Source: Lepidodermella squamata
Taxonomy: Eukaryota > Animalia > Gastrotricha
Direction of reading: 5' to 3'
Assembly: GCA_047495785.1 (NCBI GenBank)
Contig: JBLDXI010000009.1
Coordinates: 4,278,001-4,342,000, forward strand
DNA: 64,000 nucleotides
Below are positions 23,363-57,805 of the stretch, piece by piece. Below the pieces are notes generated by a model. The model ran no database searches and was not told the origin of the DNA. It was given only the letters and a program-made list of their open reading frames with translations. A program made the translations under genes and the position numbers. How positions within the stretch are numbered: the first letter of the stretch is position 1; each line of letters starts with the position of its first letter.

Positions 23363-24636
23363 TTAGAGTGTATTTTCAGGTGTGCTTCGATCCACTACCT
23401 CATCTTCAAAAGCATTTATCTCCGTAACGGTTCCATTGTTCTTCCTTTTACATCTTCGAAGCCATTGTACAATTATATTGACGAGTAAATTCAGTCGAAT
23501 TTGCATTTCGTCCAAAATTATTGAAGTGTATGACATGCCGACGAATGTGAAAACGGACAAGAAAGTTCTGTACACCGCAAACTGCCATCGTTCAAAAAAT
23601 TTGTCATGCATGTTCTGACCAGCAATCAAATCACCAAATCCTGAAAAATATCAAGTGAGAATTTTGTTCGCACATCAAAGTTCAAACCTATTGTCAACAC
23701 AGTGATGAAGGTGTAGTACCAAGCGGACACGTAGTCCCATTTTTCCATGTAATGAAAAAAGCCCGACGTTCCAAAGATTAGAGCGAAGTATGCCGCAAAT
23801 AGGAAGATTTTCGTGACTAGCCAGGACCTCTTCTTAATCGATGCATTCTCATCCTCCGAAATCACTTGCACGACCTCCGAATAGTTGCTAGCTCCATCGT
23901 TAGTTGGATTAACCCGCAACTTCATGTCGACCCAATTCGAGTAATCACGTTTTAATCTCAGCGTCACGAAATACCGGATGATTCGTATGAACACATTTTG
24001 CAGCGGCTTGGAGGTCAGTAATGTTAGCTCCTTTATTTTCCCGATGGCGTTTAGGCAGATTGGTATCCCGATAATAGCGTAGAAAACGCAGAAAATCTTA
24101 CCAAACGTTGTTACAGGTGCCAAGTTGCCATATCCTATAGTAGTAACTACGGTCTTTGAAGCAAAAATAATTATTTCAACATCATCCAAGGTAAGAAAAC
24201 TGACCACACAGAAGTACAGTGATCCAGCGATATCCCATTTCGCTGTAGTAAGGATACTGTCTAGCTCATCAAACGAGCAGTTTGGGACCAACGTGACGAC
24301 AGCTCGTTGAAAAATGATTTCAGTGTAGCTTGACGTTGCATTTTTGAAGGTTTGGACCGACAGCAAATTGATGTTCTGCACGTCAAGACTTCGTAGGTTA
24401 ACCCCGTTCTCAAAGATCAAAGTTTCCTCAGAGCTGTTTTGGTACTGAATGACCTTCGGGCAGGTCGAGTTGTCGGAAATTTCTGCTATATAGTTCCGCC
24501 TTTGTTCAAGCTCAGCTGGGTGTTCCACGAAATGGAAACAGATCATGCCAAAACCGAGCCATAATACGTTCAGCAGATAACTGATCAATGCACTGATTCT
24601 AATCTCACAGGCAACATCTATTTCATCATCACTCAT
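23363..24636 (-). CDS. K2P potassium channel 2 (~391 aa)
   Basis: Exons 24636-24205, 24153-23688, 23640-23363; P1 TTIGYGN, P2 TIG|FGDLIAG. Confidence 0.92.
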
Positions 24637-24750
24637 TTTTCATGCTTAAAAGAAGTGAGAGACTGTTTAATGCGAACAAGCTACACTCTGCAAGTGTCTT
24701 CTGATTCAATATTTGCTTTCTCCTGATATCTCGAATTACGATATTTTTAT

Positions 24751-25759
24751 TCACGATTTATTATTGCGCCGACATATCTTCAATACAGCACAGCCTATGC
24801 TGTAGTTGATCAACATTTCTATATGGTCAAAAATGATTGACGTGAAGGCCATGCCAATGAATGCCGTTACTGATGTGAAGACTCTGTAAAGCGCCAGTTT
24901 CCATGGCTGATCCACAACGTCAGTTATGTATTGCCCAGCAACATAATCTCCGAACCCTGGATTCATAAATAAAGCATCAAATCAGGATAAAAGATCTTTC
25001 CTGGATCTTACCAATTGTTGAAACAGTGATGAAAGAATAGTAAAGACTTGTTAGGAAAGACCAAACTTCGGCGTAGGAAAGTATCGTCGTTGTCAAAAAG
25101 TAGTAGGCTGCATAGATGATCATAAATATGGCGTAAGTTCCCACCCAGCAGCGAATAATTAGCTTCTTGCTGGTCTCAGGCAGTTCATCGGTTCCGACTT
25201 TCTTGCATCGGGATAGCAAAGCTGCATGTAGGACTCTTGCGTGGGCATAAACTGATTCGCGAATTCGACTAATAACATTTAGGCAAATAGGTATGCCGAA
25301 TGTTGCGTAGACTACGCAAAATACTCGACCCGCATCGGTTTGCGGGCTAAAATTGCCGTAGCCGATAGTGGAAATTACTGTCTACAGCGAAAAAGTGATT
25401 TAGCAATAAGAACGCGACTCGAGGCTTACTATGCAAAAGAAAAGTGATCCTGCAAGCTCCCATTTCGACTCGCCTTGAGTTTCATTCTTTATCCGAGAGC
25501 AGTCCACAATTTCTGCCAATTTCAACGTTTCAGCCTTGGTTAGAGCAGAGTTATAGCTCGAATTAGCTGCATACAGAATAATAGGCGTTTCGAGGCTGAT
25601 GTTGCTGCATTTCGCTAGTTTATCGCTAAGAATTCTAGATTCATTCGGCCTCTCGATTATGTGAAATATCGCCATGCCGAAGACGAGCCATATAATTATT
25701 AATCCGTAGCTCAATAGAATACCGAATCGCAATTCTGATAGGGTTGGCGAATCAGCCAT
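24751..25759 (-). CDS. K2P potassium channel 3 (~301 aa)
   Basis: Exons 25759-25430, 25381-25012, 24956-24751; P1 STIGYGN, P2 TIG|FGDYVAG. Confidence 0.92.
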
Positions 25760-26001
25760 TAATTTAGCCAAACCTATACATTAATAGTATATTACCTCGG
25801 GATTTATCAAGCTACTGAGGACTGAGGATATCAGAAACAGCAATGACATACAGCAAATGAGCAAACGTAGCTTGCCATGGCACGAATGCAGTATTAATGG
25901 ATTGTCGGCTTCAATCAATTGAAGCCCAAATAATTCCATCGGAAATTTGTTTACACTGACATGGCTTATAATAGATTTCAGAACAATCGTGTTTATCCTC
26001 A

Positions 26002-29880: not shown

Positions 29881-30892
29881 TCACGATTTATTACGCCGGC
29901 ATATCCTCAAAGCAATACGGCGTATGGTGTAGTTGATAAACATTTCCAGTTGTTCGAAAATTATTGACACGAAAGCCATGCCAGTAAATGCTGTAACTGA
30001 AGTGAAGACTCGATAAAGCGCTAGTTTCCACCCTTGGTCCACAACATCATTTATGCGTTGCCCGGCAACATAATCTCCAAACCCTGCGTTTATAAGGAAA
30101 TGAGCTTCAGTTAGTGTAGAGTTTCCGATGATCTTACCTATTGTTGAAGCGGTGATGAAAGAATAGTAGAGACTCGTAGGATAGGACCACATTTCAGCGT
30201 AAAAAATAATGGTGGTTGTAAAAAGGCAGTAAGCTGTATATATCAGCCCAAATAAGATGTAAGTTAAAACCCAGCAGCGAAAAATTAGCTTATTGCTGGT
30301 CTCAGGCGTTTCTTCGCTGTATACTCCACATTTTTTGAAACGAGATAACAGTGCTGAGTGAAGAACTTTGGCGTGGGCGTAAATCGACTCACGTATTCGG
30401 CTAATCACATTCCAACATATTGGTATGCCGAATGTTGCATAAATCGCACAAAATGCTCGACCTATATCAGTCTGTGGACAAAAGTTGCCGTAGCCGATAG
30501 TGGAAATTACAGTCTACAACGAAAAATTCTGGAATGGGAAGATTTCAGGATTGAAGGCTTACTATGCAGAAGAGGAGTGCGCCTGCAAGCTCCCATTTCG
30601 ACTCGCCTTGGGTTTCATTCTTGATCCGAGAACAATCCACAATTTCAGCCAATTTCAACGTTTCAGCCTTGGTTAGAGCAGAATTATGGCTCGAATTGGC
30701 TGCATATAGGATAATAGGTCTTTCGAGGCTGATATTGCTGCATTTCGCTAGTTTATCGCTAAGAATTCTAGATTCATTCGGCCGCTCGATTATGTGAAAT
30801 ATCGCCATGCCGAAGACGAGCCATATAATTATTAATCCGTAGCTCAGAATAATACAGAATCGCAACTCGGATAGGGTAGGCGAATCAACCAT
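29881..30892 (-). CDS. K2P potassium channel 4 (~302 aa; recent paralog of gene 3)
   Basis: Exons 30892-30563, 30513-30138, 30083-29881; STIGYGN / TIG|FGDYVAG; exon 1 is nearly identical to that of gene 3. Confidence 0.92.
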
Positions 30893-33222: not shown

Positions 33223-34465
33223 TCAGCATCCTGAAGTTTTCTGTTCTTCAAAAGATGTTTTTTCGATTGCTGCTACTCTGATTCTTTTCGCAGACTGGTA
33301 AAGCCATTTGGCGATTGTGCCAACCATATTGCTTAAGCGAGTTTCAAGGGCTATGATGATGATGGAGGTATAGGACATGCCCATGAAAATGAATACTGAC
33401 AGGAAATTTCTGTACAGAGCAAATTTGTAGTAGCTCGTGAACAGCTTATTCATATCTTGGCCAGCAACCATATCTCCGAAGCCTAAATTAAAAAACACAG
33501 CGTTTCCTAGCTTAGTTAGGCTCATGGAAGCTTACCAACTGTCAAAACTGTGATAAAGGTGTAATAGAAAGCTTCGATGAAGTTCCACCCTTCGATGAAG
33601 ATAATGAAACCAGCTGCTCCGAAAATGAAGCCGAAGTAAGCCAGAAGTAGAATGGCACAGGTTAGAATCCAGGCGCGAGTTTCGATTTTCAACTGCAGCT
33701 CGTGCGCCCTTTCCGAATTGCTAGACAAATCATACAGTTGCAAGTTTAACCAGGCTGAAATATCTTCCTTTGATCTTCGTGCAATAGCAAAGTTGAAAAG
33801 TTGTATCAAAGCTCGATGCATCCTCCAGGCAAAATGGTATGTTAATTTTCTAAGCCTCGTGACAGCATTGAAGCAAATAGGAATTCCGATAATTGCATAT
33901 AGGACGCATAGAATCCTCCCTGTATCTGTTGCTGGATACAGATTTCCATAGCCAATTGTTGTCACTAGAGTCTGATATTGATGATATGTTCAAAGATCAA
34001 AACAAGAAATCTTTTTATACTTACAACGCTGAAGTACAAGGAACCGGCTAAATCCCACTTTGAGGTTAATTCGGAGCTACCCAGCTCTCCAACCGTACAA
34101 TTAGGGACTAGCCTAATCACGGTTCTTTGAAAATCGACCTTCAAATACGTTGATGTCTCATTTGTGAAGGTTTTCAGCGATATCAATTGCAAGTTTCTCA
34201 CGTCGCCAAATTTGTAAGCTGCGGCCAGGTCGAGAATCGTTGTCTCAACTGTGTCGTTATCATATTGAATCACCTTAGGGCAACTTTGGTTTTGAGACTT
34301 CCTGGAGATTAAATCCATAGCCCGCTGAATTTCGGCCGGGTGTTCGATGTAATGGAACGTGACCATCCCGAGGATGAGCCAAACAGATAGGAACACATAG
34401 CTGAGGGCTGCCCCTATACGTGCCTCGCCAATGTTAGGCTCCTTTTCAACAATAGGGGATGTCAT
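33223..34465 (-). CDS. K2P potassium channel 5 (~378 aa; closest to gene 2)
   Basis: Exons 34465-34025, 33971-33536, 33482-33223; TTIGYGN / TVG|FGDMVAG. Confidence 0.92.
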
Positions 34466-34667: not shown

Positions 34668-35696
34668 CTACTTCCCGCCTCTGCAAATCAACTTTACTAT
34701 ACGCGCTATTAGTTTGCTAATCAACTTTTGTATTTGCTCTAGAACAATGGAGGCGATTGCCATACCGGTGAAAATATTGACTGATAGAAAAATCCGGTAA
34801 AGCGACATCTTCCACCTGGCATCCAAGACTTCGTTCATCACTCGCCCGGCTATGAAGTCACCAAAACCTGAAAATATCCGACATTTGATTTGATTTCTCT
34901 CAGGGGTAACGACTCACCTATAGTTGTTAGTGTGACAAAAGTGAAATAAAGACTCGGGAAATATTCCCAACTTTCGACTCCTTTGATAATCGCTGTTGAC
35001 CCAAGGACATAGGTTACGTATAGCACTGTAAGTAGGAAGTAAGCTGCGATCAAACATCGGAGATTTAGCGAATTCGAAGCCGAATCTTTGCCTCCCACTA
35101 CTTCTGTTTTCACCACGAATCTTCGGTACAAAGAGGCTTGCAAGCGCTTTGCGATCGCATGGATAACTTTTCGAGTCAGACTTATAACATGCCAGCATAA
35201 AGGGATTCCAATGATTCCATATAGGATGCAACATGCTCTCCCAGCCACTGTTTGAGGTGAGAGATCTCCGTATCCTATCGTAGTTACAACTGCCTGAAAA
35301 AACGACAATTATTTTCAATATCAAATCAGCAGTACTTGAAAAACAAACGACGCTGAAGAAAAGCGACCCGGGCAAGTCCCATCTCGACAAATTTTTCTTT
35401 ACATCAATTCGAAGAAGGGAGCAAGATATCAAGTTTGAAATATTGCCTGCTGTCGCATTACGATTGATCCGACTCTCCTCCATCGAGTACTCGACATTGC
35501 TCATTTCTATCTTGTCCAAACTTCTGACGCTAGTCTTGAGGCTAGTGTGATTGAAACACTTGGCTAGCCACTTATCAGGTGGATTTTGCTCGCATGGAAA
35601 TTCAATGAGATAGAAAGCCACCATCCCAATTACAATCCATGCAGCAAGAATCAAATAGCTTATGAAAAATGAAAGTTTCAGCTCTTTTCCTGACAT
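34668..35696 (-). CDS. K2P potassium channel 6 (~307 aa)
   Basis: Exons 35696-35349, 35293-34918, 34867-34668; TTIGYGD / TIG|FGDFIAG. Confidence 0.9.
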
Positions 35697-35789: not shown

Positions 35790-36797
35790 TTATTTCTTAT
35801 TGCGTCGGCATATAGCGAACACCATGCGACTTATTAAGAAAGAGATCGATCTTTCTAATTGATCGAAAGCTATTGATGCCAGGGCCATGCCTACGAATAC
35901 GTTGATTGAGATGAACACGCGATAAAGGGCCAACTTCAATGATGTGTCAATGGATTCAGTTATATTTCTACCAGCAATGAAGTCACCAAATCCTGTGAAA
36001 ATTACTTGGTTTAAATTGGTCTCGTAAATTGGTCATAAGCAATTTTACCTATGGTTGAGATTGAGATGAAAGAGAAGTAAAGACTTGTTGTATAAGGCCA
36101 ACACTCCGCATAATGGATGATTGCTGAAGTTGCCAGGACGTAGCCAGCGTACAACGTAACAAGGATGATATAAGTCAAAACCCAACAAATGAGGACCCTT
36201 TTGTCGATTTGACTAGCACCCGTAATATCTTGAACGACCGTTTTTTTGCAACAAGGTACATCTAGGAGCTTCGAATGCAGTTTCTCCGCATGGAAGTAGA
36301 CCGACGATCGGATACGATTCATTACATTCAAGCAGATTGGTATTCCAAAGAATGCGTAGACAACACAAAAAGCTCGACCAGCCTCAGTTTGGGGCGCAGA
36401 GTTGCCGTAGCCTATGGTTGATACTACCGTCTAGGAAAGAATCACTAAAATTACACGGAAATTTCCAAAAACTAATGTGGCTTGCAATGCAAAAGAAGAG
36501 TGCCCCAGCCAGTTCCCATTTCGACTCTCCATTTGTTTCATTCCTGAACTGATAGCAATTGACTATATCTGGAATCTCAATCTCGGAAAGCGAAACATTT
36601 GACCGCAAAATTTTGTAGGACTTGGAGATGCTGAGGTTGTTGCATTTCTCGGAGACGTCACTGATCATTTTTGCTTCCGGGGGCTTCTCGATAAAATGAA
36701 AAATTATCATGCCGAAAGCGAGCCATATCAGGAGTAAGAAATAGCTCAGGATAATGCCAAAACGGTGCTCTGCAGCAGTCGGAACTTCCTGCGCCAT
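35790..36797 (-). CDS. K2P potassium channel 7 (~298 aa; GC-AG intron 1)
   Basis: Exons 36797-36486, 36430-36049, 35992-35790; STIGYGN / TIG|FGDFIAG; the first donor is GCAAGC. Confidence 0.87.
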
Positions 36798-37119: not shown

Positions 37120-38211
37120 TCAGACCCTAGCTTCCCCTGGGGAGATATACACATCAGCATTTGCAGGTCTCTCATGAGACTTATGACGATCGACGATTAG
37201 TGAAACGAATCTCTTAACAACAAACGATATCAAATTTTCAACGTGGCTGAACATTATTGAAAGAAGAGCAATTCCGCAGTAAGTGTAGAGTCCAAGGTAC
37301 ATTTTGTATAAACCCAGCATGTGGATCGAATCAACTGCTGAAGTTAAAGTCTGTCCAGCAACCAAGTCGCCGAATCCTAGGAAATACAATGTAATAGAAA
37401 CAGATTTTTCAAATAAACGGCTCACCAATAGTTGATAGAGTGACAAAGTTGTAGTAGAGGGCTTGAAGGTAGCCCCAGCCCTCCACATACTGGATAAGGG
37501 CAGCCGTTACTGCTACAACACTCAAATAGCCTAGGCTTAAAGTAATACCGACAATTGTCCAAGTTTTCTTTTTCCATTTCGAATTACTGCCGATTCCTAT
37601 CCATTTTGAGGCAATCCACTTTTGGAATCTCTTCGCCGCGATGTTGACACTATCCCGTAACCGGCTGGTCGCATTCAGACATAGCGGTATGCCGATGGTC
37701 GCGTAAAGGACACACATTACTCGGCCTAGATTGGTAGCCGGGGCAAGAGTTCCATAGCCAATTGTAGTCACTACAGTCTGCAATTAACAAAATGAGTAAT
37801 CTCTCGCAAAACTTTCAAAAAAGCTAAAACCATGCTGAAAAATAGGGCTCCAACCCAGTCCCATTTTGAAGACTGATAGCCACCCACATCAATATCTGTA
37901 TTCACTACGGAAGTTGAATTTTTATAGGTAATATTGAGATAGACAGATGTCGCGTTGCGGAAGATCTCCATTGATTGAATAGAGATGAATTTGAGCAGTT
38001 GCTTCCCGCTAGGTTGATTGAAATAATCAGCTGGATAAACCGAACTTTCGATTGTTGCCATAGCGTTCTTCATTTTCGAGATGTTGGTTGCAACTTCATT
38101 AGGATGCTCAATAGCGTGGAAAATTACCATTCCAACCACAAGCCAGAAAAAGAGTAAACCGTAACTCAAAGTAACAGATAAGCGACTCTTTAAAAGCTCA
38201 GCCCTCTCCAT
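37120..38211 (-). CDS. K2P potassium channel 8 (~329 aa)
   Basis: Exons 38211-37831, 37777-37426, 37376-37120; TTIGYGT / TIG|FGDLVAG. Confidence 0.9.
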
Positions 38212-42063: not shown

Positions 42064-43178
42064 CTATGCCGCTGTCTGCATTTCATCCGAGCTGTTTTTT
42101 CTTGCACCGACCTGATTTATCGGCTGCTGTTTCGAACATTTCATCATAGGTCTCACGATTTTGTTAACCAGTTGCGTTACCATGTTCTCAACGTGACCGA
42201 AGAGAATAGAAAACATGGCGATTCCAGCATAAGTATAGACTGACAGATAACATTTGTAGACGCTTAGTTTTCCAATAGTGTCAACAGCCGCAGTCATTTT
42301 CTGCCCAGCGACGAAATCTCCGAAGCCTGAAAGATGAATGCTGATTAGACTTTACTTCAAGTCTTCTGAAAAAACTTGCCTATTGTCGAAAATGCGATAA
42401 AGGTGTAGTAAAGAGAGTGGCCGTAGCTCCATGTCTCTATATAATGAATGATTCCAGCTGACCCAAGGATGAGTATAGCGTAACCAAGGCAAAGGACCGT
42501 TATTGTCACAGACCAAGCTTTCTTGTTCAAACTGGCGTCATTCTGATCGGGACTTTTTGTCAATTTTCTGAGAAACCATGACTGCATTCTTTGAGCACGA
42601 TCATTGACCGACTCCCGTAGCCTAGCTGTTGCGCTAGTGCATATAGGAATTCCGATTATTGCGTAGAAGAAGCACATGAGCTTTCCGATAATTGTAGCAG
42701 GCGCCAAAGTGCCAAATCCAATGGTCGTAACCACTGTCTAAAAGGTCAAAAGATATCAACAAATGAGGCTAATATGGATTCGGACTTATACCATGCTAAA
42801 AAATAAGGCACCACTCCAGTCCCACTGGGAAGTTTTGTAAACTGCGGGATCATTCTCGGTGTTCATCGTTCTTGAATAATTGACAATCAAATAGGTCGCA
42901 GTTACATTTGTAAAATAATCCATCACGGCAATGTCGATGTTTTGAAGCCTAGATCTAGACATGTGCTGCTCGAGTTGAGCGATATCAAAAGTTACCGTTT
43001 CTGTAGTGATTTGACTAGTCTGGCTGCTTTCTGACTGCGCCTTCTCAAGCTCGTAAGGATACTCGCAATAGTGGAAGACGATCATGCCGACAAGGAGCCA
43101 AATGGCGAGGAGAGCATATGAAACAACAACTGTTACTCGCCTTTCACACGGCGGCGGTCTAGTTTCGTCGTCACTCAT
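42064..43178 (-). CDS. K2P potassium channel 11 (~335 aa; GC-AG intron 2)
   Basis: Exons 43178-42792, 42737-42380, 42326-42064; TTIGFGT / TIG|FGDFVAG; the second donor is GCAAGT. Confidence 0.88.
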
Positions 43179-44159: not shown

Positions 44160-44235
44160 TCGGCCATGGTGGCTCAGAGGTTGTAGCCGTGCCTTCTCAG
44201 AAAGGCAGCCCGGGTTCAATCCCCGGGTACGACAC
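44160..44235 (+). repeat. tRNA-derived sequence (pseudo-tRNA or SINE head)
   Basis: Pol III A box TGGCTCAGAGG and B box GGTTCAATCCC at tRNA spacing, with a TGCCTT/AAGGCA stem; irregular anticodon loop. Confidence 0.5.
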
Positions 44236-44447
44236 TTTTCGAGCACTCGTGTAGCGCGTTACAGGATCGAACTTTGTAGAGGCTATACCTGTTCACCACA
44301 AGTCCCCCGCCCTAGGAGAAATCCACTTTTCAAGCAAAAAATGGAATGTGTTACTGCAGCTTTCTTTATTTATACTGCTAAGTTTTCATTCATCACCTCA
44401 TGAAAAACATAATGTGAAACAGTTTATTTATTGGCGTCCATGCGATC

Positions 44448-45561
44448 CTAGGCGGCTGGCTGTATTTCATTCGAGCTATTTTTGCTTGCACTGATTTGAT
44501 TTTTTGGCGATTTTCTCGAACATCTCGTCATAGGTCTGACAATTGTGTTAACAAGCAGAGTTACCAAAGACTCTAATTGGGAGCAGAGAATTGAAAACAT
44601 GGCGATGCCACCATAGGTATAGATTGACAGATAGAACTTGTAAATACTCATTTTTCCAAACGTATCAACAGCTGCCGTCATTTTCTGGCCAGCGACAACA
44701 TCTCCGAAACCTGGATGATAAATGCCGATTATAGTTTTGACTGCAGGTCTCTTGAAATGCCTTACCTATTGTAGAGAATGCCACAAAGGTGTAGTAGAGA
44801 GAGATGCCGTAACTCCATGTCTCAACATATTGAATGATTCCAGCGGATCCTAAGACCACCACAGCGTAACTAAGGCAAAGGATCGTAATCGTAACTATCC
44901 AAGCTTTCTTGCTCAGGCCAGCGTCATTCTGCCCGGAAGTTTTGGTAAATTTCGGGAGAAACCACCTATGCATTCTCTGTGCTAGATCGTTGACAGTCTC
45001 CCGTAGCCTAGCTGTTGCGCTATTGCATATAGGAATCCCAATTATTGCGTAGAAAAAGCACATAAGCCTCCCGATATATGTAACTGGGGCTAAAGTTCCG
45101 AATCCGATGGTCGTAACCACAGTCTATAATAGCTTGAACGTTAAAATTCGATGTTTGCATTGATATCGACTTACCATACTGAAAAACAAGGCTCCACTCC
45201 AGTCCCATTGAGAAAACGTGGTACTGTTATCGCCATTTTCCGATTTTGGAGTCCTTGAAAACGTGACTATCAAAAATGTCGAAGTCGCATTCGTGAAATA
45301 ATCCATCGCCACAATATCGATGTCTTGAAGTTTGGATCTTGACATTTGCTGCTCGAGTTGAGTGATATCAACAGCTACAGTTTCTGTAGTGATTTGACTA
45401 AGCTGGTTGCTTTCTGATTTCGCCTTTTCAAGCTCGTAAGGATGCTCGCAGTAGTGGAAGATGGCCGATCCAACTAGGAGCCAAATGCTGAGGAGGGCGT
45501 AAGAAGCAGAAACGGATAATCGTTCTTCGCACAGCGATGGTCTATATTCGTTGTCACTCAT
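44448..45561 (-). CDS. K2P potassium channel 12 (~335 aa; paralog of gene 11)
   Basis: Exons 45561-45175, 45123-44766, 44710-44448; TTIGFGT / TIG|FGDVVAG; exon sizes are identical to those of gene 11. Confidence 0.92.
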
Positions 45562-46081: not shown

Positions 46082-47300
46082 TCATTCAGAAATGTCTGAG
46101 GGGCAGCTGCGAATCCGTATTTCTTCAGGCAACAAATCATTCTTTTCTCGGCATTTCCGTCTTAGACAAATACAGCAACATGACGCAACGATGTGATCAA
46201 CAAATTTTTCGAAAATTTTCTCAAGTGACCCTAAGATGATTGACGCAAGGGCCATTCCAACAAACGTAAACATGGAGACGTAAATTCTGTAAGCATTACG
46301 CCAGTATAAGTCAGATATTCCATCCGAAGTGTTGTGTCCTGCAATCATGTCTCCAAAACCTTGAAAAAATGAATGCTTAAATTATATTAGCGTGCATATA
46401 GTTTAGTTACTGACCTATTGTTGACACGGTAATGAAGCAGTAGTAAAGAGTGGATTTGAAAGTCCAGTTTTCGACGAAGCTAATCAGCAGACAGCTTGCT
46501 ATCATGAAACTCGCATATGCTGATGCAAGTATACTATAAGCTGCTAGTATAGATTTGACCCTCAAAGCATCTAGGGAAGCATCAGATGGTTTTTCAGAAA
46601 TAGCCATTTTCGAATACCAGATTTCAAATAGCTTTTGGTTGATGACATCGGCTAGTAGCTGAATATTGGTCCTGATTCGCTTTATGACACCGAAACAGAT
46701 AGGAATTCCGAATATGGCGTACAAAACGCAGACAATTTTCCCAGATTCGGTCGAAGGGGCGAAGTTCCCGTATCCGATTGTCGTCACAACGGTCTGATTC
46801 ACAGAAAAAATGAGAACTCCGATCATATAGAGGAGAACGTAACTTACCAGGCTGAAGAAAAGTGATCCCGTATAGCTCCACTTCTGGACACCCTCCTCTA
46901 CAGCCGCAATCTGATTCTGGGTTTCATTCGTGGCTACCGAGCTTGTTGGAGTCGGCAGAACACTCAGTTTGATGTAAGTCACATTCGCATAGGTTGAGGT
47001 CTTGTTCTCGAAGCGATCCACCACAATATGGCTAACATTGTCCAGGAGGAAGCCGAGAGCGGACAACGGCGGGTTACTTTGGCCTCCGAGGTCTACGATG
47101 AATGACCTTGATTCTAATCGAATTTTCTTCGGAGTAGCCGGGCCTTGAGTCAATGGATCTTGGGTCGGCTCAGGAATGAATAAGCTCGGGGTCTCAACTT
47201 TGTTGAAAATGACCATTCCGAGGCTGAGGTAAAGGATTAAGATGACAAAGCTCACGACAGTCGCAAGTCTAGACCGGCATAAAATTTGGTGGGAATTCAT
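46082..47300 (-). CDS. K2P potassium channel 13 (~369 aa)
   Basis: Exons 47300-46848, 46793-46415, 46359-46082; TTIGYGN / TIG|FGDMIAG. Confidence 0.92.
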
Positions 47301-47548: not shown

Positions 47549-48656
47549 TCAATCAGCGGGCAGTCCTTTATTGTCAATAGCCGGCTTACTAACAACGCAT
47601 GACGCTGGATTACTGAGGGATTTTATGGTTCGATTAACTATCCAGGCGAATGATTTCTCGAGTAAGGCCAGAAGCACCGCTGTCCATGAAATGCCGAGAA
47701 ATACGTATAGAGTGAGGAAAATACGGTACATGATATGAACTGGCAAATTGTTGACAGTTTGCTTCTTTTGCCCGGCTAGTAAATCACCAAAGCCTATATC
47801 ACAATAAATTGAAAAATCCGTTTAATTTAGCAACTAGGAACTCACCTATTGTAGTCACTGTAATGAAAGTGTAATAAAGCGAGGAGAGGTAAGTCCATTC
47901 TTCGACATAGCAAATAACAGCCGAAGTCCCGAAAATGAAAGCCGTGTAAATTGCGATGAAAATTGAGTAGGTTGAAAACCACGCGAAATTATCATTAAAA
48001 TTCTTCTTTGTCACGTGATAATGAAGGAAGGGCACCTCAACAGACTCTAAATGCTCTGATTCTATATAGGAAAGAATCATTTGCTGAGTTTGATTCGCCC
48101 TATATTCAATCATGTCCTTCATCCGCCCAATGGCGTGTAAACATATCGGAATCCCAAATATCGAGTAGAGTGAGCAAAGAATCTTCCCTAAGTCAGTCGA
48201 GGGAGATAAATGGCCGTAGCCTATTGTTGTAACAATCGTCTGAAAATGTGGCTTTAGAACATCTTTGCGATTTTATATAAGACTTACGATGCAGAAAAGT
48301 AAGGAACCGCTAACATCCCATTTAGCAGTTCGGCTTGCAGAGTCCTCTCCTGCCCGTCTGTATTCAATAGTCACGTAACTTGAGGTGAAATTTTTGAAAG
48401 TCTCAACCGAGACGACATCGATATCTCGCAGCAATTCCGAGTAAGGATTTTGCCGTATCTTGAAAACATCGAGCGTTAACTTATTCGTGTTATTGCCACG
48501 TCGAGCTGGAGCATGATCTTCATTCTCAGACGGACACTCAACGTAATGAAAGATGAAAGCTCCGAAAACAGACCATGAAATGAGTACCAAATATGTTATG
48601 AAAATTGCGTTGCGAATTTCGTTCATACTCGCAAGTTTGAGCGGCTCGTCAGCCAT
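47549..48656 (-). CDS. K2P potassium channel 14 (~335 aa)
   Basis: Exons 48656-48288, 48239-47846, 47793-47549; TTIGYGH / TIG|FGDLLAG. Confidence 0.9.
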
Positions 48657-48846: not shown

Positions 48847-49963
48847 TCAAAAATCATTGTCATATCGAGACTTGGTGCGACCCAGAGGTGTATGAGAGTT
48901 ATCTAAGGAGGTTTCGCCATCACCGCGTTTTTTGAAGCAAGTCTTCAAGAGAATTAGATTCACCAGCTTCTCGCAAAGATACTCTAAAACACCGAGGATA
49001 ACTGAAGTGAAGGCCATTCCAATGAAGACGTAGACACATAAGAAAATCCGATAAACATTTAGGGCAGAATAGTTCGAAAGAACCTCCAACCTCTGTCCGG
49101 CCACCAAGTCGCCAAAACCTGATAACGAATTTTAGATGAAACTTCACCTAAAAGTTCAATCCTTACCTATCGTTGTAATGGTGATGAAGTTGTAGTAGAG
49201 TGCCGATAGGAAGGACCATTTCTCGACGTAACTCATGAATGCTGAGACGGATAATACGAGAGTAACGAAAAAAGTGACCAAGATGAAATATGCCAACACC
49301 AATAGTCTAAATTCGTGTTGATTATGGATCACATGCACTGCGATGTTTCGGCGGAACCTATGCTTTGAGCGGAATAGGCGGCACAGATTTCGATGAATAT
49401 CGTTCACGTGAAAGTGGATTAAGTCTCTCAGGCGGCTTAAAGCATGTGAGCATAGTGGGATTCCTATCACCGCATAGAAGGTCACTGTAACTTTGCCAAG
49501 GTCAGTAGCGGGCGCTAAGTGGCCATATCCTATCGTTGAAATTACAGTCTTCAAAACATGAACAACTAAAATTCTCATCTTTCTTGGAGAATGAACTTAC
49601 GAAGCAAAATAGAAGCGATCCCATTATGTCCCATTGGTATGCCTCGAAGTGATCATCCTCGTGATGTGAACCTTTCGTCGCCGCAAAAGTAAGTTCGACA
49701 TATCTCGATGTTTCATTCCGGAAGAACCTGATTTGAATTGCATCGAAACCAGACAGTTTTAATCTATCCCCATCGCTGTTCGTATCAAAAATAACCGTGA
49801 AATTCTCAGTTTTCTCATGCGAAGGTGAAACCACTGGCGACTCTATGTAGTGGAAGATTATCGCTCCAAAAAGTCCCCAAACGCCTAGAACAAGTAGGCT
49901 GATGAAAAGTGATGTTCGAATAGCCCATAGATTGGGCCTTTTCTGCGTCTCTCCAGAGTCCAT
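48847..49963 (-). CDS. K2P potassium channel 15 (~338 aa)
   Basis: Exons 49963-49601, 49548-49167, 49118-48847; STIGYGH / TIG|FGDLVAG. Confidence 0.92.
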
Positions 49964-50143: not shown

Positions 50144-51271
50144 TCAAATCGACGAAACATATTGTTGCGCTTTATCCCATTTCAACTCCTCAACTTCTTC
50201 GATGGGCTCTTTCACGGGTTTAGGACCTAGTCTGAAGCAGATGGCAGTTTTTAGCTCATTCACGAACCATCCGTACAGCTTCAAAAGACCAGTTAGACTC
50301 ATCAGAGAGAGCACCCCACCGTAGAAGATGATTGCGATAAGGAACAGGCGATATACGATCAGCAGAGTGGGATCGGCAAAGTTCTCGCTTTTCTTACCGG
50401 CAATCATCTCCCCAAATCCTGAAATATTGGATAGAACACCGCTCAATTTTTGAAAAATTGTATGGCTCACCTATAGTCGAGATCGTAGAAAAAACGAAAT
50501 ACAAACTGTCGACGATGTTCCAATTTTCCAAATGAGAGATTAAAGCCGAAGTACCGAGAACAAAACCGAGTGTGAACAATAGAAAAATAAAAACGAAAAA
50601 TGCTGTAATTTTGACTTTAAGCCTCGTCCTAGCTGCCTGAAGCCGTCGTTTGAGATTCGGGCCAAGAAACTCTTCCTCACAGGGTATCGCTTGAACTGGG
50701 TCATGTGCGGTGTAGATTTTGTTGAAAATTATGCCAGAATATAGGAAAACTGTGTTTTGAACCTGCCAGATCGCGTGGAAGCACAATGGGATACCAATAA
50801 TTGCGTATGGTATTGTTAGGACTTTTCCTAATTCACTCGTAGGAAAAAGGTGTCCGTAACCAATTGTTGTCATAATAGTCTAAATTTTCTAGGAGTTATT
50901 CAGAATCCTTTGTAGGCAGAGTTCAAAATACTTACGAAGCAAAAGAGAAGTGAGCCACTGAAGTCCCACTTCGTCTCAGCATCCTCGTCTTTAAAATGAG
51001 TTACCTCGGAGAATTGGATTATTACGTAACTTCCAGTCTCGTTTACAAGAATTCGAGCTGAAGTTAAGCTGACAGAGGGCATAATCGGCAAGACTGTATC
51101 ATTCTGGGAGTTTTTGATGGCCAGTGTTCGAATTTTCGGGCGAGAATGGCTCGTGTCCATCTGCGATTCAAGCATGCTGAAGACAGCGGCGCCTACAACA
51201 GCCCAAGCGGCTAAAATCGAACAGCTCAGGCAAAGAGCAGCCTCAACTTCGTACTTTTGCCTCTGTTTCAT
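50144..51271 (-). CDS. K2P potassium channel 16 (~339 aa)
   Basis: Exons 51271-50936, 50879-50471, 50418-50144; TTIGYGH / TIG|FGEMIAG. Confidence 0.9.
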
Positions 51272-51610: not shown

Positions 51611-52868
51611 TCAGCTTATAACATTCGCAACATTTTCTGATGGATAAATTCCGTTTTCATTTGTAGCGTAACTTTTCTGTTGATCAGTTTCCACAATTGT
51701 TGGCACTCGCCTCCTCAGACAGCATCTCAGCATCGCACGGGCGAATTTGGTAATGTACTTGTTAGCTAGCCCTTCCATTTCGGACATCATGACTGACGTG
51801 AAGGCCATTCCGAAAAACACGAAAGTTGCTAGGAATAACCGGTATAAAGTGAAAGAACCATAAGACGCAAATAGCTCCATTTGTTGACCACCGACCAAAT
51901 CGCCAAAACCTATGAGAAAACTGAGTCAACTAAACTTCAAGCGTAGAATACTCCCTTACCTATAGACATGACAGTGATAACGCTGTAGTAGAGAGATGCA
52001 ACGTAACTCCATTTCTCGACGTTTTGAAAAATTCCAGAAATCATGAGCAGAAGTAGTAGATAGGTTAGGATTAGCAGGAAATAGGTCATTAGCCATAGCC
52101 TGGTCTTAATTTTGGTATTACCCCGCCCTGGCACTTCATCAACAGCGGCATTTAGCTCGTTCGAACTAGCAAATCGATCGGCCTGTAGCTCAATCCAAGT
52201 TCCTTCGTTTCGATTCAGGATCTTCAAATAAAGCTTCCTGATCAGACGAAACAGTCCAAGGGCGAATTCTCGACAGAATTTTCTCAGTCGAGATATGACA
52301 TTTAGGGCAAGGGGTATGCCAATAATTGCGTAGAAAACACACCAAACTCGACCAGCATCAGTTCTAGGCGCCAAGTTACCGTATCCTACAGTTGTTACTA
52401 TGGTCTGAAAATTAGCCCTCAAGTTTCGCGGCATGAGCTGTGACGAAATTGACTTACAGTACTGAAGAACAATGACCCAGCCAAGTCCCATCGAGTCGTA
52501 GTTTTGTTCTTGCTAGGAACCACTGGTGCTCGCGTGAAAGTGACATTGAAAAAGTTGGACGAGCCATTTTGGAAAGTTGCTATCGATATGATGTTGACAC
52601 CTTCAATAAGGAAAGCCCCGAGGCCATTCGACGTGAGATTTGTGTCAATAACTAAATTTTCAATCTTTCCCTGCGGCTGCTTGCTCACTGCAGTTGGATC
52701 GGCTGAAAGCATAAGGTAGTCATCGGTATTTTTTGACTCAATGTAATGGAATGAGACCATCCCAAGGCACAGCCATAGCATGAAGATGAGATAGCTAACA
52801 GCATTTGCTGTTCGGATTTCGCCTATAGACAGCGGAGTTGTAGAAACTGTGCTGCTATCCTGTGTCAT
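51611..52868 (-). CDS. K2P potassium channel 17 (~384 aa)
   Basis: Exons 52868-52458, 52404-51960, 51909-51611; TTVGYGN / MSIG|FGDLVGG. Confidence 0.9.
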
Positions 52869-53079: not shown

Positions 53080-54171
53080 TTATTGAAGCCTATCGCCCAA
53101 CGGTTCACAGATTTTAGCGTCATTTTCTGCTGAAAAGTTATCAGTTTCTTTCGTTTCTTCAGCATGAATAATTTCTTCCATGGAACTCTGACCGCGACAC
53201 ATTAGCAAGACGGCTTTGTTGATTAGGAATTCGACCAGCTTCTCCAATTCGTGAAGTATCATTGAGGCGAAAGCAATACCGCCGAAAACGATGAAAGATA
53301 GGAAGATTCGGTAAATGCAGACCGCAACGATGCTGCTGAAAACATCCATCTGCTGGCCAGCAATCATGTCACCAAATCCTAATTCAATTCTTTTAAATTC
53401 GTTTCTATATGCTGTGAAAATCGTACCTATTGTTGTTACTGTTACGAAGAGGTAGTAGACTGTATCGAGAAAATCCCAATTTTCAATCCAGCTTATCAAC
53501 CACGATAACAAGGTGACCAAACAATGGTAGGCCAGTACTAGAATCAGACCGGTAACGGTCCACGTTCGAAAAATCGACCCGGCACGAAACTTCGCGGCCG
53601 ATTTCTCGAAGATTCTTTTGTGGATGTGAGATGAGAGTCGAAGGACTGCTTTTCTTATTTGCCCAACCACATTGAAACAAAGCGGGATTCCGATGACTGC
53701 GAACCAAACGCATATCACTCGACCGGCTGTTGTTACAGGGTACAGATTGCCGTAGCCAATCGTCGTCACAACAGTCTATCAAATTTTTCCTTTAGAAAGA
53801 ACATTTTTTCTGTTAGAACTCACCAAACTGAAGAAAAAGGAACCCAATAAGTCCCATTTCGATGTTGTCTGAGCACTGCCAGGTTTGATGAAGGTGATAT
53901 TGATGTAGGTCGAAGTGATATTGGTGAAGACCTTTGCGGATATCAATTTGACTGGTCCGATATCGGGAATAGTATAATCGGAGTACTCGACCACAATGTT
54001 TTCGGTAGCATTTTGCTCAAGATATTTTTTGTTCTCTGTTTGCTCTCCTGGCGACTCCACAGTATGAAACAATATCATTCCAATACCTAGCCAGATCAGC
54101 AACAGGATATAGCTAAGTAAGAAAGTTGCTCCCGGTAAGGCAACATTTTTCGAGTCTCTGCGACCAATCAT
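53080..54171 (-). CDS. K2P potassium channel 18 (~331 aa)
   Basis: Exons 54171-53824, 53775-53427, 53378-53080; TTIGYGN / TIG|FGDMIAG. Confidence 0.92.
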
Positions 54172-55077: not shown

Positions 55078-56184
55078 TTATTGCGATTCCAACAATGCAA
55101 CATCTTTCGATTCTTCAGCTAAATTGTGTTTACAACTCACAACTTCAGCTGGCTTTATAACAGCAATTTCAGACTGGTCTTCGTTTTTACGACGACAAAT
55201 TATCAGCACAAGTTTGTTAACCACACGCTCGGCTAGCTTTTCCAACTCATGAAATATTATCGAGGCGAAAGCCATTCCACAGAAGACGATGAGTGATACT
55301 GATATGCGGTAGAGGCCATATAGCCAAATGTTGGCGAACATCTGCCTCTGCTGGCCCGCGATCATATCCCCAAATCCTAAATATACATTTTATGGAAGTA
55401 CTGGGGAAAAAAGGGGTATTATCGTTACCTATAGTTGACAATGTTACGAAGAGGTAGTAAAGAGTTGCGGGAAATGACCAGTCTTCCACCCAACTGATTA
55501 AGGTGGACGAGCATGTTATGAAAAAATAGTAGAGCACCAGCATCAAAATGGAAGTGATTATCCAGCTGCGTTGATTTATTGGATTGTTCACCGCCCCTTG
55601 CCGCCTTGACGCAAATCTTTGCATCAGAGTAGTGACTCGGCTATTGAGATTATGAGCGAATCTTAACGCGGTCTTTCGGACTTGGCCAATTACGTTGAAG
55701 CACAGTGGAATGCCGATTACGGCAAAAATCACGCAGGCAAATCTTCCTAATTTTGTTGAAGGAAACAAATTGCCATAACCAATTGTTGTCACAACAGTCT
55801 GAATTAAAAAGAAATGTCTCCTTGAATCTCTGTAATCACAGAACTTACCATGCAAAAGAAAAGTGAGCCCGGTAAGTCCCATTTCGTCGGCTCCGTATTG
55901 CAAGTCTCATTCTCTATGAAGGTCACATTGAGGTAGGTCGACGTTTCATTTTTGAATGTTGTAATGGATAAGAGTTTAAGACTTTTCAATGCAAAAGAAG
56001 CTGCGTCCAATTGTGCAACAATCAAACTTTGCACTACTGCCTCGTTGCTGCCCTCTTCTCCTGGAGATTCGATAAGGTGGAACGCTACCATCCCCACCAG
56101 CAGCCATGTTAACAGTAAATGGTAGCTGACGAACAAAGTCGTTCGGGGATAATCGAATCGCTCTGTGCCAGCGTCGCCGATCAT
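55078..56184 (-). CDS. K2P potassium channel 19 (~334 aa)
   Basis: Exons 56184-55849, 55798-55429, 55376-55078; TTIGYGN / TIG|FGDMIAG. Confidence 0.92.
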
Positions 56185-56629
56185 TGTAAATCCGCCATAG
56201 TTTTCTATCTAAAAATCAATACCTATACGAGTAGGTTCTGCTGATTTCGCACTGATGCAGTGGGTAAATACGTATAGATGATAGCTAGTAAAAAAATTAT
56301 AAGAGGGGCACACACATACATAATATAACTCTGAGGTTATTCGTAAATAGATCGCCGCTACTGATCAATCACTCTCGATACCCCTGTTTTCTTAGAGAAA
56401 TACTCTCAGTAAAATATGTATGTTGGCGTAGTGGAGTACATGTATGCATGTGTGAGAAATCGATTTCAGCCTCGTACTTTCTTATATATCCCGCTGCGAG
56501 AAAACATACGTTTACAAGGGTATGAAGCCCGTAATTATCGGCAAATAGCGTATACGATTCCCTATAGAATTTAGCAAATGGCACACAATCAAATTTGCAT
56601 AATTTCAAAAAATGACTTTATTCAGCACC

Positions 56630-57805
56630 TTATTCTTTATCGTCGCATTTTCTAACATCCAATTCGATTATCTGCTGTTCTTCCTCGATCAAGCATTCCC
56701 TAGCCGCGGCTGATTGCTGAATGCCGATTTTAGATTGCGTTTCGGCAACGGCTTTTCGTCGGCAAATTTTCAGCACGAATTTACTGACCAGGCCATCGGC
56801 TATTTTCTCAAGCTCGTTAATTATCATTGAGGCGAATGCCATGCCGCTGAAGATTATGAAAGACAGAAAAATTCGATAGATGCCAAATACCCACAGACTG
56901 GGAAATATTTCTCGCTTCTGGCCAGCTATCAAATCCCCAAATCCTGAAACAACAAATAATTATGAAAAAATCGAAAATCTCAATATTTACCTACCGATTG
57001 TAGTCAGAGTGACGAACAGGTAATATTGAGTCGTTAAAAATGCCCAGCCTTCAACCCAAGAAATCACCGTGGAAGCCGACATAAGGAATATGCAGTAAGC
57101 AGTGAAGAGTATAACCGAGGTTATAATCCAGCCGCGGTATCTGATCACCCAGTTCAGGCCCAGGCTATCTTGATTTTTTGATGGAAATCTGGCAAACCAC
57201 GCGGCCTGTACCTGACAAACGCGTTTGTGAAGGCGAGAAGCTATTCGAAGTGCAGCTTTTCTCACATGGCCGATGACGTTGAAGCAGAGTGGTATGCCTA
57301 TTATTGCAAAGATTACGCAGGCCGACCGGCCGAGTCGCGTTGATGGGTATAAATTCCCGTAGCCAATGGTTGTCACAACAGTCTATACACAAAAAAGAAA
57401 AATTATCGAATATACCAGACGAATTTTGAAGAAGCTCACAAGGCTGAAGAAAAGAGACCCAGGCAAGTCCCATTTCGAGGTTTTCCTACTCCTGGCGCCT
57501 TGATTGCATTCTTTAGACCTTATGAATGATACATTGAGGTAGCTGGACGTAGCGTTTGTGAAGGAAGCAATCGATAACAGCTGAACTCCTCCGAAATCGG
57601 ACAATGACTTATCCGATTGGTCCACGACCAAATTCTCAACTTCATTTTGCTGGGTCGAAAGTTTGTTCCTCTCTTGTTCCGGTGGCGACTCGATTAAATG
57701 GAAAGTTAACATGCCCAGCAACAGCCAGAGGACAAGCAAAATATAGCTGAAGACTAGGTTAATCCGGGGATATTCGTGTTGCTTGCCGGTGTTGTCGACG
57801 ATCAT
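56630..57805 (-). CDS. K2P potassium channel 20 (~355 aa)
   Basis: Exons 57805-57440, 57382-56995, 56943-56630; TTIGYGN / TIG|FGDLIAG. Start chosen by alignment with genes 18/19; the ORF stays open upstream to 58024. Confidence 0.9.

What the first reader, a model, noticed from the sequence alone, without database searches (positions are those of the whole stretch)
23363..57805. Non-canonical, hypervariable M1-P1 ectodomain with a shared F-x-N-x-T-S-x-Y-h-x-h-x-F/Y motif
Seen: exon 1 encodes a loop of roughly 60-100 aa that differs greatly between paralogs, but 15 genes (2, 5, 8-20) keep a motif: [164 protein letters not shown]. It reads as alternating hydrophobic strands around an N-glycosylation sequon. 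Genes 3, 4, 6 and 7 lack it and have a Cys pair instead; genes 2 and 5 have both. Known: the canonical K2P cap is two alpha helices, often with an apex Cys. Inference: the cap is replaced or extended by a small beta-rich module that could be a ligand- or matrix-binding sensor.
Basis: partly seen in the sequence, partly recalled or inferred. Interest (0 to 1): 0.85.

Follow-up and report, generated by a model that had tools for sequence, protein, structure and literature searches.

The report
K2P channel array with glycosylated beta-hairpin cap
Nineteen neighbouring potassium-leak-channel genes of an unidentified small animal share a short conserved motif in their outer loop that is best read as a sugar-bearing hairpin turn, and the loop seems to be built from beta-strands instead of the two helices that cap every such channel solved so far; this rests on sequence and low-confidence models only.

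Summary
On the minus strand, 23363-58024 carries 19 intact three-exon K2P genes. RNA contigs confirm the introns of genes 18-20. The Asn is invariant in all 19, so genes 3, 4, 6 and 7 keep F/I-x-N-x-T and lack only the strand after it.

My reading: the core F-x-N-x-T is an "enhanced aromatic sequon", a known N-glycosylated reverse-turn module. It sits at the tip of a beta-hairpin, and the rest of the motif is the returning strand. Two AlphaFold2 models give the same order, M1, strand, short helix, strand, turn, strand, pore helix, with no helical cap. One is exon 1 of gene 19; the other is a full-length relative. Loop confidence is low (pLDDT 44-70). Composition, short Pro/Gly-rich post-M1 segments and a missing apex Cys in most paralogs agree.

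"Hypervariable" means relaxed constraint (22% identity; dN/dS about 0.3), not shown diversifying selection. Nothing supports a ligand or matrix sensor. A metagenomic relative has one orthologue with the motif, so the array is a lineage-specific expansion. Verdict: new variant of a known kind, moderately interesting, needing a dimer model or a structure. The scan also noted this array on the same stretch (s1-404889).

The parts
23363..24636 (-). K2P gene 2 (391 aa). Exons 24205-24636, 23688-24153, 23363-23640. Motif FKNATSSYTEIIF at 24310-24348. Two loop Cys.
   Evidence: Pfam Ion_trans_2
24751..25759 (-). K2P gene 3 (301 aa). Exons 25430-25759, 25012-25381, 24751-24956. Keeps only I-K-N-E-T (25478-25492), 8 residues before the pore-helix Trp. 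Two loop Cys.
29881..30892 (-). K2P gene 4 (302 aa), a near-copy of gene 3. Exons 30563-30892, 30138-30513, 29881-30083. I-K-N-E-T at 30611-30625.
33223..34465 (-). K2P gene 5 (378 aa). Exons 34025-34465, 33536-33971, 33223-33482. Motif FTNETSTYLKVDF at 34130-34168. Two loop Cys.
34668..35696 (-). K2P gene 6 (307 aa). Exons 35349-35696, 34918-35293, 34668-34867. N-R-N-A-T at 35451-35465. Three loop Cys. No returning strand.
35790..36797 (-). K2P gene 7 (298 aa). Exons 36486-36797, 36049-36430, 35790-35992. F-R-N-E-T at 36534-36548. Two loop Cys. Intron 1 has a GC donor.
37120..38211 (-). K2P gene 8 (329 aa). Exons 37831-38211, 37426-37777, 37120-37376. Motif FRNATSVYLNITY at 37924-37962, with a second aromatic sequon Y-L-N-I-T.
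38362..39556 (-). K2P gene 9 (357 aa). Exons 39158-39556, 38704-39094, 38362-38645. Motif FTNTTSTYLIVNY at 39254-39292.
40362..41567 (-). K2P gene 10 (362 aa). Exons 41151-41567, 40705-41089, 40362-40648. Motif FTNATSTYLIVNY at 41265-41303.
42064..43178 (-). K2P gene 11 (335 aa). Exons 42792-43178, 42380-42737, 42064-42326. Motif FTNVTATYLIVNY at 42876-42914. Intron 2 has a GC donor.
44448..45561 (-). K2P gene 12 (335 aa). Exons 45175-45561, 44766-45123, 44448-44710. Motif FTNATSTFLIVTF at 45259-45297.
46082..47300 (-). K2P gene 13 (369 aa). Exons 46848-47300, 46415-46793, 46082-46359. Motif FENKTSTYANVTY at 46974-47012. Pro-rich segment after M1.
   Evidence: Pfam Ion_trans_2
47549..48656 (-). 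K2P gene 14 (335 aa). Exons 48288-48656, 47846-48239, 47549-47793. Motif FKNFTSSYVTIEY at 48360-48398.
48847..49963 (-). K2P gene 15 (338 aa). Exons 49601-49963, 49167-49548, 48847-49118. Motif FRNETSRYVELTF at 49685-49723.
50144..51271 (-). K2P gene 16 (339 aa). Exons 50936-51271, 50471-50879, 50144-50418. Motif LVNETGSYVIIQF at 51011-51049. P2 filter ends G-F-G-E. Longest branch in the tree.
51611..52868 (-). K2P gene 17 (384 aa). Exons 52458-52868, 51960-52404, 51611-51909. Motif [13 protein letters not shown] at 52536-52574.
   Evidence: an RNA contig of X2 reaches 52458-52642
53080..54171 (-). K2P gene 18 (331 aa). Exons 53824-54171, 53427-53775, 53080-53378. Motif FTNITSTYINITF at 53890-53928.
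   Evidence: both introns are skipped in RNA contigs
55078..56184 (-). K2P gene 19 (334 aa). Exons 55849-56184, 55429-55798, 55078-55376. Motif FKNETSTYLNVTF at 55918-55956. Exon 1 was folded: strands at residues 51-57, 70-78 and 83-90, with the turn N79-S82.
   Evidence: both introns are skipped in RNA contigs
56630..58024 (-). K2P gene 20. Exons 57440-58024 (or from the ATG at 57805), 56995-57382, 56630-56943. Motif FTNATSSYLNVSF at 57524-57562.
   Evidence: a 1206-nt RNA contig spans 56667-57980 with both introns removed
21170..22612 (-). K2P gene 1, a different type. It has no intron before P1, a P1 filter T-V-G-F-G, and a long strand-like loop containing Y-Y-R-N-A-T (an aromatic sequon with Tyr).
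   Evidence: its orthologue P0026 lies next to the array-type gene in the relative

Best explanation
These are ordinary-pore K2P leak-channel genes whose M1-P1 ectodomain is probably not the usual two-helix cap. It is more likely a small, heavily N-glycosylated beta-meander: strand 1 (consensus E-T/N-h-h-h-D), a short variable connector, strand 2, a tight turn, and strand 3.

The conserved motif is the end of strand 2, the turn and strand 3. Its core F-x-N-x-T is an 'enhanced aromatic sequon'. There, a Phe two residues before the glycosylated Asn stacks on the first GlcNAc, which raises glycosylation efficiency and stabilises the reverse turn. In strand 3 the alternating L/V/F side chains form a buried face. 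The Y/N/T face is exposed, and in six paralogs it carries a second aromatic sequon (Y/F-x-N-x-T/S).

On this reading the motif is a folding and stability element of the ectodomain, not a binding site. The rest of the loop drifts under relaxed constraint.

Shown: gene structure, expression of three genes, motif conservation, sequon enrichment, absence of an apex Cys in most paralogs, and the lineage-specific expansion.

Inferred: the beta fold, actual glycosylation, and that two such modules roof the pore in the dimer.
For: 1. AlphaFold2 on exon 1 of gene 19 (15-paralog alignment) gives M1 helix 12-39, strands 51-57, 70-78 and 83-90, a helix at 58-63 and the pore helix from 103. The hairpin has pLDDT about 68-70. 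The invariant N79-x-T81-S82 falls exactly in the turn between the two strands.
2. AlphaFold2 on the full-length relative P0004 (53-row alignment A6) gives the same order: E65-69, H77-82, E90-98, E102-109. M1 extends only to residue 57. The membrane core has pLDDT above 90 and pTM is 0.70. The model matches TREK-2, TRAAK and TWIK-1 at E about 1e-9.
3. [quoted passage not shown] Phe is at i-2 in 15 of 19 paralogs, Thr at i+2 in 18 of 19 and the Asn in 19 of 19. Of 58 loop sequons, 25 have F or Y at i-2. Relatives keep an aromatic residue there too: Y-R-N-A-T in gene 1, Y-T-N-A-T in P0008, F-N-M-T in P0002 and W-N-D-S in P0004.
4. Loops carry 2.3-6.3 sequons per 100 aa, against 0-1.3 (mostly about 0.4) elsewhere in the proteins.
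5. The last 55 aa before the pore helix hold 33% V/I/Y/F/T/W against 24% in 33 ordinary K2Ps (p 4e-5), and 36% against 44% helix-formers (p 1e-5).
6. The post-M1 segment is short and contains Pro/Gly (up to 7 in the first 25 residues). Twelve of the 19 loops have no Cys.
7. A profile of exon 1 matches solved K2Ps only over M1 and the pore helix, not over the loop.
Against: Loop confidence is low: pLDDT 44-55 in the full-length model and 52-70 in the exon-1 model. The alignments are shallow, about 26 loop sequences. Both models are monomers, although the cap is a dimer structure.

The composition test uses related paralogs, so its p-values overstate the evidence. A hydrophobic-moment scan did not discriminate strand from helix; strand 2 peaked at 130-145 degrees.

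The nearest named relatives are TALK-type K2Ps. They carry F-L-x-N-x-T-C/S at what I take, from my own knowledge of K2P structures, to be the tip of a helical cap. So a sequon at a hairpin tip does not by itself prove strands. No glycosylation data exist.
Confidence: 0.55

Rival explanations
1. A diverged but still helical cap. The motif marks the apex turn between cap helix 1 and cap helix 2, as the F-L-x-N-x-T-C/S apex does in TALK-type channels. On this view AlphaFold2 simply failed on a shallow alignment.
For: The nearest named relatives are KCNK16/17-like. Their caps carry F-L-x-N-(F/Y/H)-T-(C/S) before the second cap segment. Loop pLDDT is low. The basal relative P0003 has a long helix-prone stretch after M1.
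Against: Neither model puts a helix longer than 6 residues in the loop. The segment after the sequon (T-Y-L-N-V-T-F-I and the like) is beta-branched with i/i+2 hydrophobic alternation. The post-M1 segments are too short or Pro-rich for a cap helix of about 20 residues in several paralogs. In genes 3, 4 and 7 the sequon lies only 8 residues before the pore helix, leaving no room for a second cap helix.
Confidence: 0.15
2. A mostly disordered, glycan-covered linker. Only the sequon is conserved, because glycosylation is needed for ER export, as in mammalian K2Ps, and there is no defined fold.
For: Low pLDDT. 22% loop identity with large length variation of 55-104 aa. High sequon density. N-glycosylation of the M1-P1 loop is studied in mammalian TREK-1 (paper listed, PMC6829520, not read here).
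Against: Conservation extends 10 residues beyond the sequon (S, Y, V, F/Y columns at 0.7-1.5 bits) and to a first strand-like block E-T-h-h-h-D. These hydrophobic positions would not be kept in a disordered linker. The same strand pattern recurs in distant paralogs of another species.
Confidence: 0.2
3. One reading: the module is a ligand- or matrix-binding sensor, and the array is a receptor-like repertoire.
For: Nineteen intact paralogs have been kept over saturated synonymous divergence. The variable connectors flank a conserved scaffold. According to other agents' notes, the same genome holds other tandem arrays of channel and receptor families (unchecked).
Against: There is no similarity to any binding domain by profile or fold. 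dN/dS in the loop is 0.04-0.45, with no sign of diversifying selection where it is measurable. The conserved residues are the structural ones, not a pocket.
Confidence: 0.1

Closest known systems
Animal K2P (KCNK/TWK) two-pore-domain potassium channels, nearest named members TALK-type (KCNK16/17-like)
   Same: Four transmembrane helices and two pore loops. Filters T-I-G-Y/F-G and T-I-G-F-G-D. E-x-P-x-E at the end of M1 and W-D-x-x-G-S-L-F-F at pore helix 1. An M1-P1 ectodomain of 55-104 aa with N-glycosylation sequons. About 30-37% identity to named K2Ps.
   Different: The M1-P1 loop is predicted as strand, short helix, strand, turn, strand rather than a pair of helices contiguous with M1 (against the review PMC8436263). 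Most paralogs have no apex Cys. The loop profile finds only 22 proteins in 1.84 billion.
Enhanced aromatic sequon (Phe-Yyy-Asn-Xxx-Thr) of N-glycosylated reverse turns (rat CD2 adhesion domain, Pin1 WW, acylphosphatase; Culyba 2011, Price 2011, as summarised in PMC4259341)
   Same: The same five-residue pattern: aromatic at i-2, Thr at i+2, placed at a predicted turn between two strands.
   Different: It is known from natural and engineered soluble domains. I found no report of it as the conserved core of an ion-channel ectodomain. Glycosylation and the Phe-GlcNAc contact are not shown here.
Cap-free two-pore relatives (plant TPK, fungal TOK1)
   Same: Two pore domains per subunit, without the animal-type helical cap (my own knowledge; the TOK1 preprint listed was not read).
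   Different: The genes here are clearly of the animal K2P type by sequence and fold, and they keep a long ectodomain rather than a short loop.

Membership tests
K2P (KCNK) channels | Two pore domains per subunit with K+ selectivity-filter signatures | tested here: met
   All 19 models have T-I/V-G-Y/F-G in P1 and T/S-I/V-G-F-G-D/E in P2. Pfam Ion_trans_2 matched with two stretches in genes 2 and 13.
K2P (KCNK) channels | M1-P1-M2-M3-P2-M4 topology and fold | tested here: met
   The alignment of the 19 models shows constant-length blocks for M1, P1-M2 and M3-P2-M4. The model of the full-length relative P0004 matches TREK-2, TRAAK and TWIK-1 at E about 1e-9. The array genes themselves could not be folded full-length.
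K2P (KCNK) channels | Extracellular cap formed by a pair of helices per subunit, one contiguous with M1 (PMC8436263) | tested here: inconclusive
   Both models give strands and only a 6-residue helix in the loop. M1 extends at most 7 residues past the E-x-P-x-E point. Loop pLDDT is only 44-70 and no dimer was modelled.
K2P (KCNK) channels | Largely conserved disulfide at the cap apex | tested here: not met
   Twelve of the 19 loops have no Cys and three have a single, non-aligned Cys. Genes 2-7 have two or three. Some accepted K2Ps (TASK) also lack it (PMC4726246), so this does not exclude membership.
K2P (KCNK) channels | Functional dimer giving a K+ leak current | not testable with these tools
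   Needs expression and electrophysiology.
Enhanced aromatic sequon | Aromatic residue two positions before Asn, and Thr two positions after | tested here: met
   F at i-2 in 15 of 19, N in 19 of 19 and T at i+2 in 18 of 19. A second Y/F-x-N-x-T/S occurs in genes 8, 13, 17, 18, 19 and 20.
Enhanced aromatic sequon | Located in a reverse turn between strands | tested here: inconclusive
   In the gene 19 model, N79-S82 is the turn between E70-78 and E83-90, at pLDDT about 68-70. In P0004, W-N-D-S lies between E90-98 and E102-109, at pLDDT about 50.
Enhanced aromatic sequon | Asn actually glycosylated, with GlcNAc packed on the aromatic ring | not testable with these tools
   Only indirect support: the predicted extracellular location, and sequon density several-fold higher than in the rest of the protein.

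The most novel reading that the evidence does not exclude
A lineage-specific K2P subfamily has replaced the hallmark helical cap by a dimeric, glycan-tipped beta-sheet roof. Its 19-gene expansion with variable connectors would then be a repertoire of extracellularly tuned, possibly ligand-sensing, leak channels: K2Ps used like a chemoreceptor family.
Probability: 0.1. Interest if true: 0.9.

Novelty: new variant of a known kind. Interest (0 to 1): 0.55.

Why it matters
The helical cap is treated as the defining extracellular feature of animal K2P channels. It shapes the bifurcated ion exit path, enables domain swapping and explains resistance to classical pore blockers (PMC8436263).

A natural K2P clade that builds this roof from strands around a glycosylated hairpin would show that the cap is replaceable. 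It would offer a compact natural test of what the cap is for. It would also be a conserved natural example of the aromatic-sequon principle, which is otherwise known mainly from protein engineering.

The 19 diverged, intact paralogs are a ready-made mutational series for loop-swap electrophysiology.

Tried and rejected
- Word-based protein search with the gene 2 loop found nothing.
- Two metagenome DNA scans found nothing.
- Foldseek/PDB and ESM-Atlas shape searches with the exon-1 model gave only weak generic beta-alpha-beta-beta hits (ACT-like, uL23), TM about 0.3. I treat these as chance. The uL23 hits of the PDB profile search, E 0.2-1, are likewise chance.
- The hydrophobic-moment scan of the alignment was not discriminating: a known helix also scored at 180 degrees.
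- Alignment A5, with every exon as a fragment row, misplaced exon 1 and exon 3 onto the second pore repeat and was discarded. A6 was checked before use.
- Full-length folding of an array gene was not possible. Spliced proteins have no reference, and the read-through ORFs of genes 2 and 13 carry intron residues inside pore helix 1.
- Taxon identification failed. A USP protein of the relative has no close named homologue. The genes flanking the relative's K2P pair are not in the window. Rfam found nothing in the window.
- No pseudogene fragments lie between the genes.

Full report
**What is there.** The minus strand of the window from 21170 to 58024 carries 20 co-oriented K2P genes.

- Genes 2-20 (23363-58024) share one structure: three coding exons and two introns of 47-63 nt.
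- Intron 1 is phase 0. It lies two codons after the F-F of pore helix 1.
- Intron 2 is phase 1. It splits the Gly codon of the P2 filter, T-I-G|F-G-D.
- All 19 reading frames are intact (298-428 aa). P1 reads T-I-G-Y/F-G (T-V-G-Y-G in gene 17). P2 reads T/S-I/V-G-F-G-D, or G-F-G-E in gene 16.
- Pfam Ion_trans_2 matches the exon-2 regions.
- Contigs of one public run (X2) skip exactly the predicted introns of genes 18, 19 and 20, with GT..AG ends. A 1206-nt contig covers gene 20 with both introns removed. The DNA-like run X1 shows no such joints. These three genes are therefore transcribed and spliced as modelled.
- No pseudogene fragments lie between the genes.

**The observation.**

- A pattern for the motif finds it in frame in exon 1 of genes 2, 5 and 8-20, and otherwise only once, out of frame. 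Shuffles expect 0.15.
- In the 19-gene exon-1 alignment the Asn is invariant, Thr is at +2 in 18, and Phe is at -2 in 15. The following S, Y, V and F/Y columns have 0.7-1.5 bits of entropy, against about 3 bits for the loop background.
- Genes 3, 4, 6 and 7 therefore keep F/I/N-x-N-x-T and lack only the segment after it. In genes 3, 4 and 7 the Asn lies 8 residues before the pore-helix Trp.
- These four genes form a clade (support 87/89) inside the array clade, so the loss looks secondary.
- A second conserved block lies upstream, E-T/N-h-h-h-D.

**How variable is the loop.** Mean pairwise identity by region:

| Region | Identity |
|---|---|
| M1-P1 loop (55-103 aa) | 22% |
| Cytoplasmic M2-M3 linker | 18% |
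| M1 | 44% |
| P1-M2 | 59% |
| M3-P2-M4 | 39% |

For the pairs where dS is not saturated, loop dN/dS is 0.32 (genes 9/10), 0.31 (genes 11/12) and 0.04 (genes 3/4). That is relaxed constraint, not measurable positive selection.

**Relatives.** A profile of the 15 motif-bearing exon-1 peptides was searched with HMMER against 1.84 billion representative proteins. It found only 22 hits at E below 1e-3.

- The best hit, P0001, is exon 1 of a three-exon gene on metagenome contigs (L001-L004). It has the same intron positions and the motif V-F-T-N-S-T-S-T-Y-A-K-I-I-V.
- That gene lies just upstream of an intronless orthologue of window gene 1. The held contigs show a single array-type gene at that locus. 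In the tree it groups with genes 18-20, inside a 99/99 clade that holds all array genes. The array is thus a lineage-specific expansion of an older, motif-bearing gene type.
- Further intronless relatives from the same samples are P0002, P0003, P0004, P0008 and a tandem trio on L007. They have different loop sequences but the same pattern of short beta-branched blocks. They usually carry an aromatic residue next to a sequon: F-N-M-T, W-N-D-S, Y-T-N-A-T, and Y-R-N-A-T in gene 1.
- Together they separate from ordinary K2Ps with 98/91 support.
- Named K2Ps are only about 30-37% identical; the nearest are KCNK16/17-like.
- The organism could not be identified. Other agents' notes call it an unidentified small-intron animal.

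**Fold of the loop.** A profile of exon 1 aligns to solved K2Ps only over M1 and the start of pore helix 1. The loop positions 52-105 find nothing.

- *Exon 1 of gene 19 (alignment A2).* AlphaFold2 gives M1 helix 12-39, strand 51-57, helix 58-63, strand 70-78, strand 83-90 and the pore helix from 103. pLDDT is 90 in M1, 68-70 over the hairpin and 52-63 elsewhere in the loop.
- *Full-length relative P0004.* No spliced array protein can be handed to the tool, so I folded P0004. Its loop has the same three blocks. Alignment A6 combined the family's full-length members, the 20 exon-1 peptides and cap-less parts of 24 ordinary K2Ps, and I checked it by eye.
- *Result for P0004.* pTM is 0.70 and the membrane core has pLDDT above 90. 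M1 ends at residue 57. Then come strand 65-69, helix 77-82, strand 90-98 and strand 102-109, but with pLDDT of only 44-55 there. The model matches TREK-2, TRAAK and TWIK-1 at E about 1e-9 over about 190-215 columns (up to 317 in a few rows), which I take to be pore helix 1 to M4.

Two different targets thus agree on strand, short helix, strand, turn, strand, and neither shows cap helices. The confidence is low, and both models are monomers of a structure that is dimeric in nature.

**Independent sequence arguments.**

- The 55 residues before the pore helix are richer in V/I/Y/F/T/W (33% against 24%) and poorer in E/A/K/Q/R/M/L (36% against 44%) than in 33 ordinary K2Ps. The nominal p-values are 4e-5 and 1e-5, though the paralogs are not independent.
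- The stretch between E-x-P-x-E and the first strand block is often only 8-15 residues and holds up to 7 Pro/Gly. Twelve loops have no Cys.
- After the sequon, L/V/F alternate with Y/N/T, the classical pattern of a strand with one buried face.

[quoted passage not shown] There the Phe ring packs on the first GlcNAc, glycosylation becomes more efficient and the turn more stable (PMC4259341, summarising Culyba 2011 and Price 2011/2012).

- In the gene 19 model, F77 ends strand 2, N79-E80-T81-S82 is the turn, and Y84 to I90 is strand 3.
- The loops carry 2-4 sequons each (2.3-6.3 per 100 aa, against 0-1.3, mostly about 0.4, elsewhere). Of 58 loop sequons, 25 have F or Y at -2. These include a second Y/F-x-N-x-T/S inside the motif of genes 8, 13, 17, 18, 19 and 20.

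I therefore read the motif as a glycosylated hairpin that scaffolds the ectodomain, not as a binding site.

**Caveat from the nearest relatives.** TALK-type K2Ps carry F-L-x-N-x-T-C/S at what I take, from my own knowledge of K2P structures, to be the tip of their helical cap. The sequon may mark the same topological point, the tip of the M1-P1 excursion, in both. This keeps a diverged helical cap alive as a rival, at about 0.15. A largely disordered glycosylated linker is the other rival, at about 0.2. It is weakened by the conserved hydrophobic positions beyond the sequon. The sensor idea has no positive evidence.

[quoted passage not shown] I found no paper describing a strand-built cap, but the searchable library is limited.

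The genes are K2P members by pore, topology and fold. The cap feature is at best inconclusive, and the apex disulfide is absent in most. I class this as a new variant of a known kind, with moderate interest, pending a dimer model or a structure.

Noticed in passing
window 24751-25759 and 29881-30892 (genes 3 and 4), with 26540-28705 between them: Genes 3 and 4 are mosaic. Exon 1 is 93% identical at DNA level (dS 0.13-0.36), but exons 2-3 are only 77-79% identical (dS 0.7-1.1). This suggests gene conversion of the 5' part. A tyrosine-recombinase (Crypton-like; Phage_integrase and DUF3504 hits) element lies between them.
   Followed up: partly
window 23363-58024: The gaps between the stop codon of one gene and the start codon of the next are very short: 93, 114, 150, 180, 190, 202 nt and so on. 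This leaves little room for promoters and UTRs. It may indicate polycistronic transcription; another agent's note reports candidate spliced-leader RNA genes in this genome. No leader was seen on the RNA contigs laid here.
   Followed up: partly
window 21170-22612 and L001:11442-12575: Gene 1 is a different K2P type. It has no intron before P1 and its P1 filter is T-V-G-F-G. Its intronless orthologue sits directly downstream of the single array-type gene in the metagenomic relative, so this adjacency is older than the array.
   Followed up: partly
window 36480-36485 (gene 7, intron 1) and 42374-42379 (gene 11, intron 2): These two introns have GC donors (GCAAGC, GCAAGT). Genes 8, 9 and 11 have weak GT donors in intron 1 (GTTTTA, GTATAA). 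Only the introns of genes 18-20 were checked against RNA.
   Followed up: no
window 23626-24636 and 46407-47300: Intron 1 of genes 2 and 13 is in frame and free of stops. This gives read-through ORFs of 336 and 297 aa that would insert 17-18 residues inside pore helix 1.
   Followed up: no
window 57806-58024: Gene 20 has an in-frame upstream extension of 73 codons from an ATG at 58024. The RNA contig reaches 57980, so a longer N-terminus is possible.
   Followed up: partly
window 50408-50419 and 52378-52395: Gene 16 ends its P2 filter with G-F-G-E instead of G-F-G-D and has the longest branch in the tree. Gene 17 has T-T-V-G-Y-G in P1 and S-I-G-F-G-D in P2.
   Followed up: no
L007:5376-8956 (also L008:7478-11056): The metagenomic relative has its own tandem trio of K2P genes of the P0004 type. 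Their loops end in h-h-I/L-R-F strands after a turn; two of the three carry a sequon there.
   Followed up: partly
window 43963-44403 (+): A 146-aa ORF lies in the 1.27-kb gap between genes 11 and 12. It has no K2P similarity and its nature was not examined.
   Followed up: no
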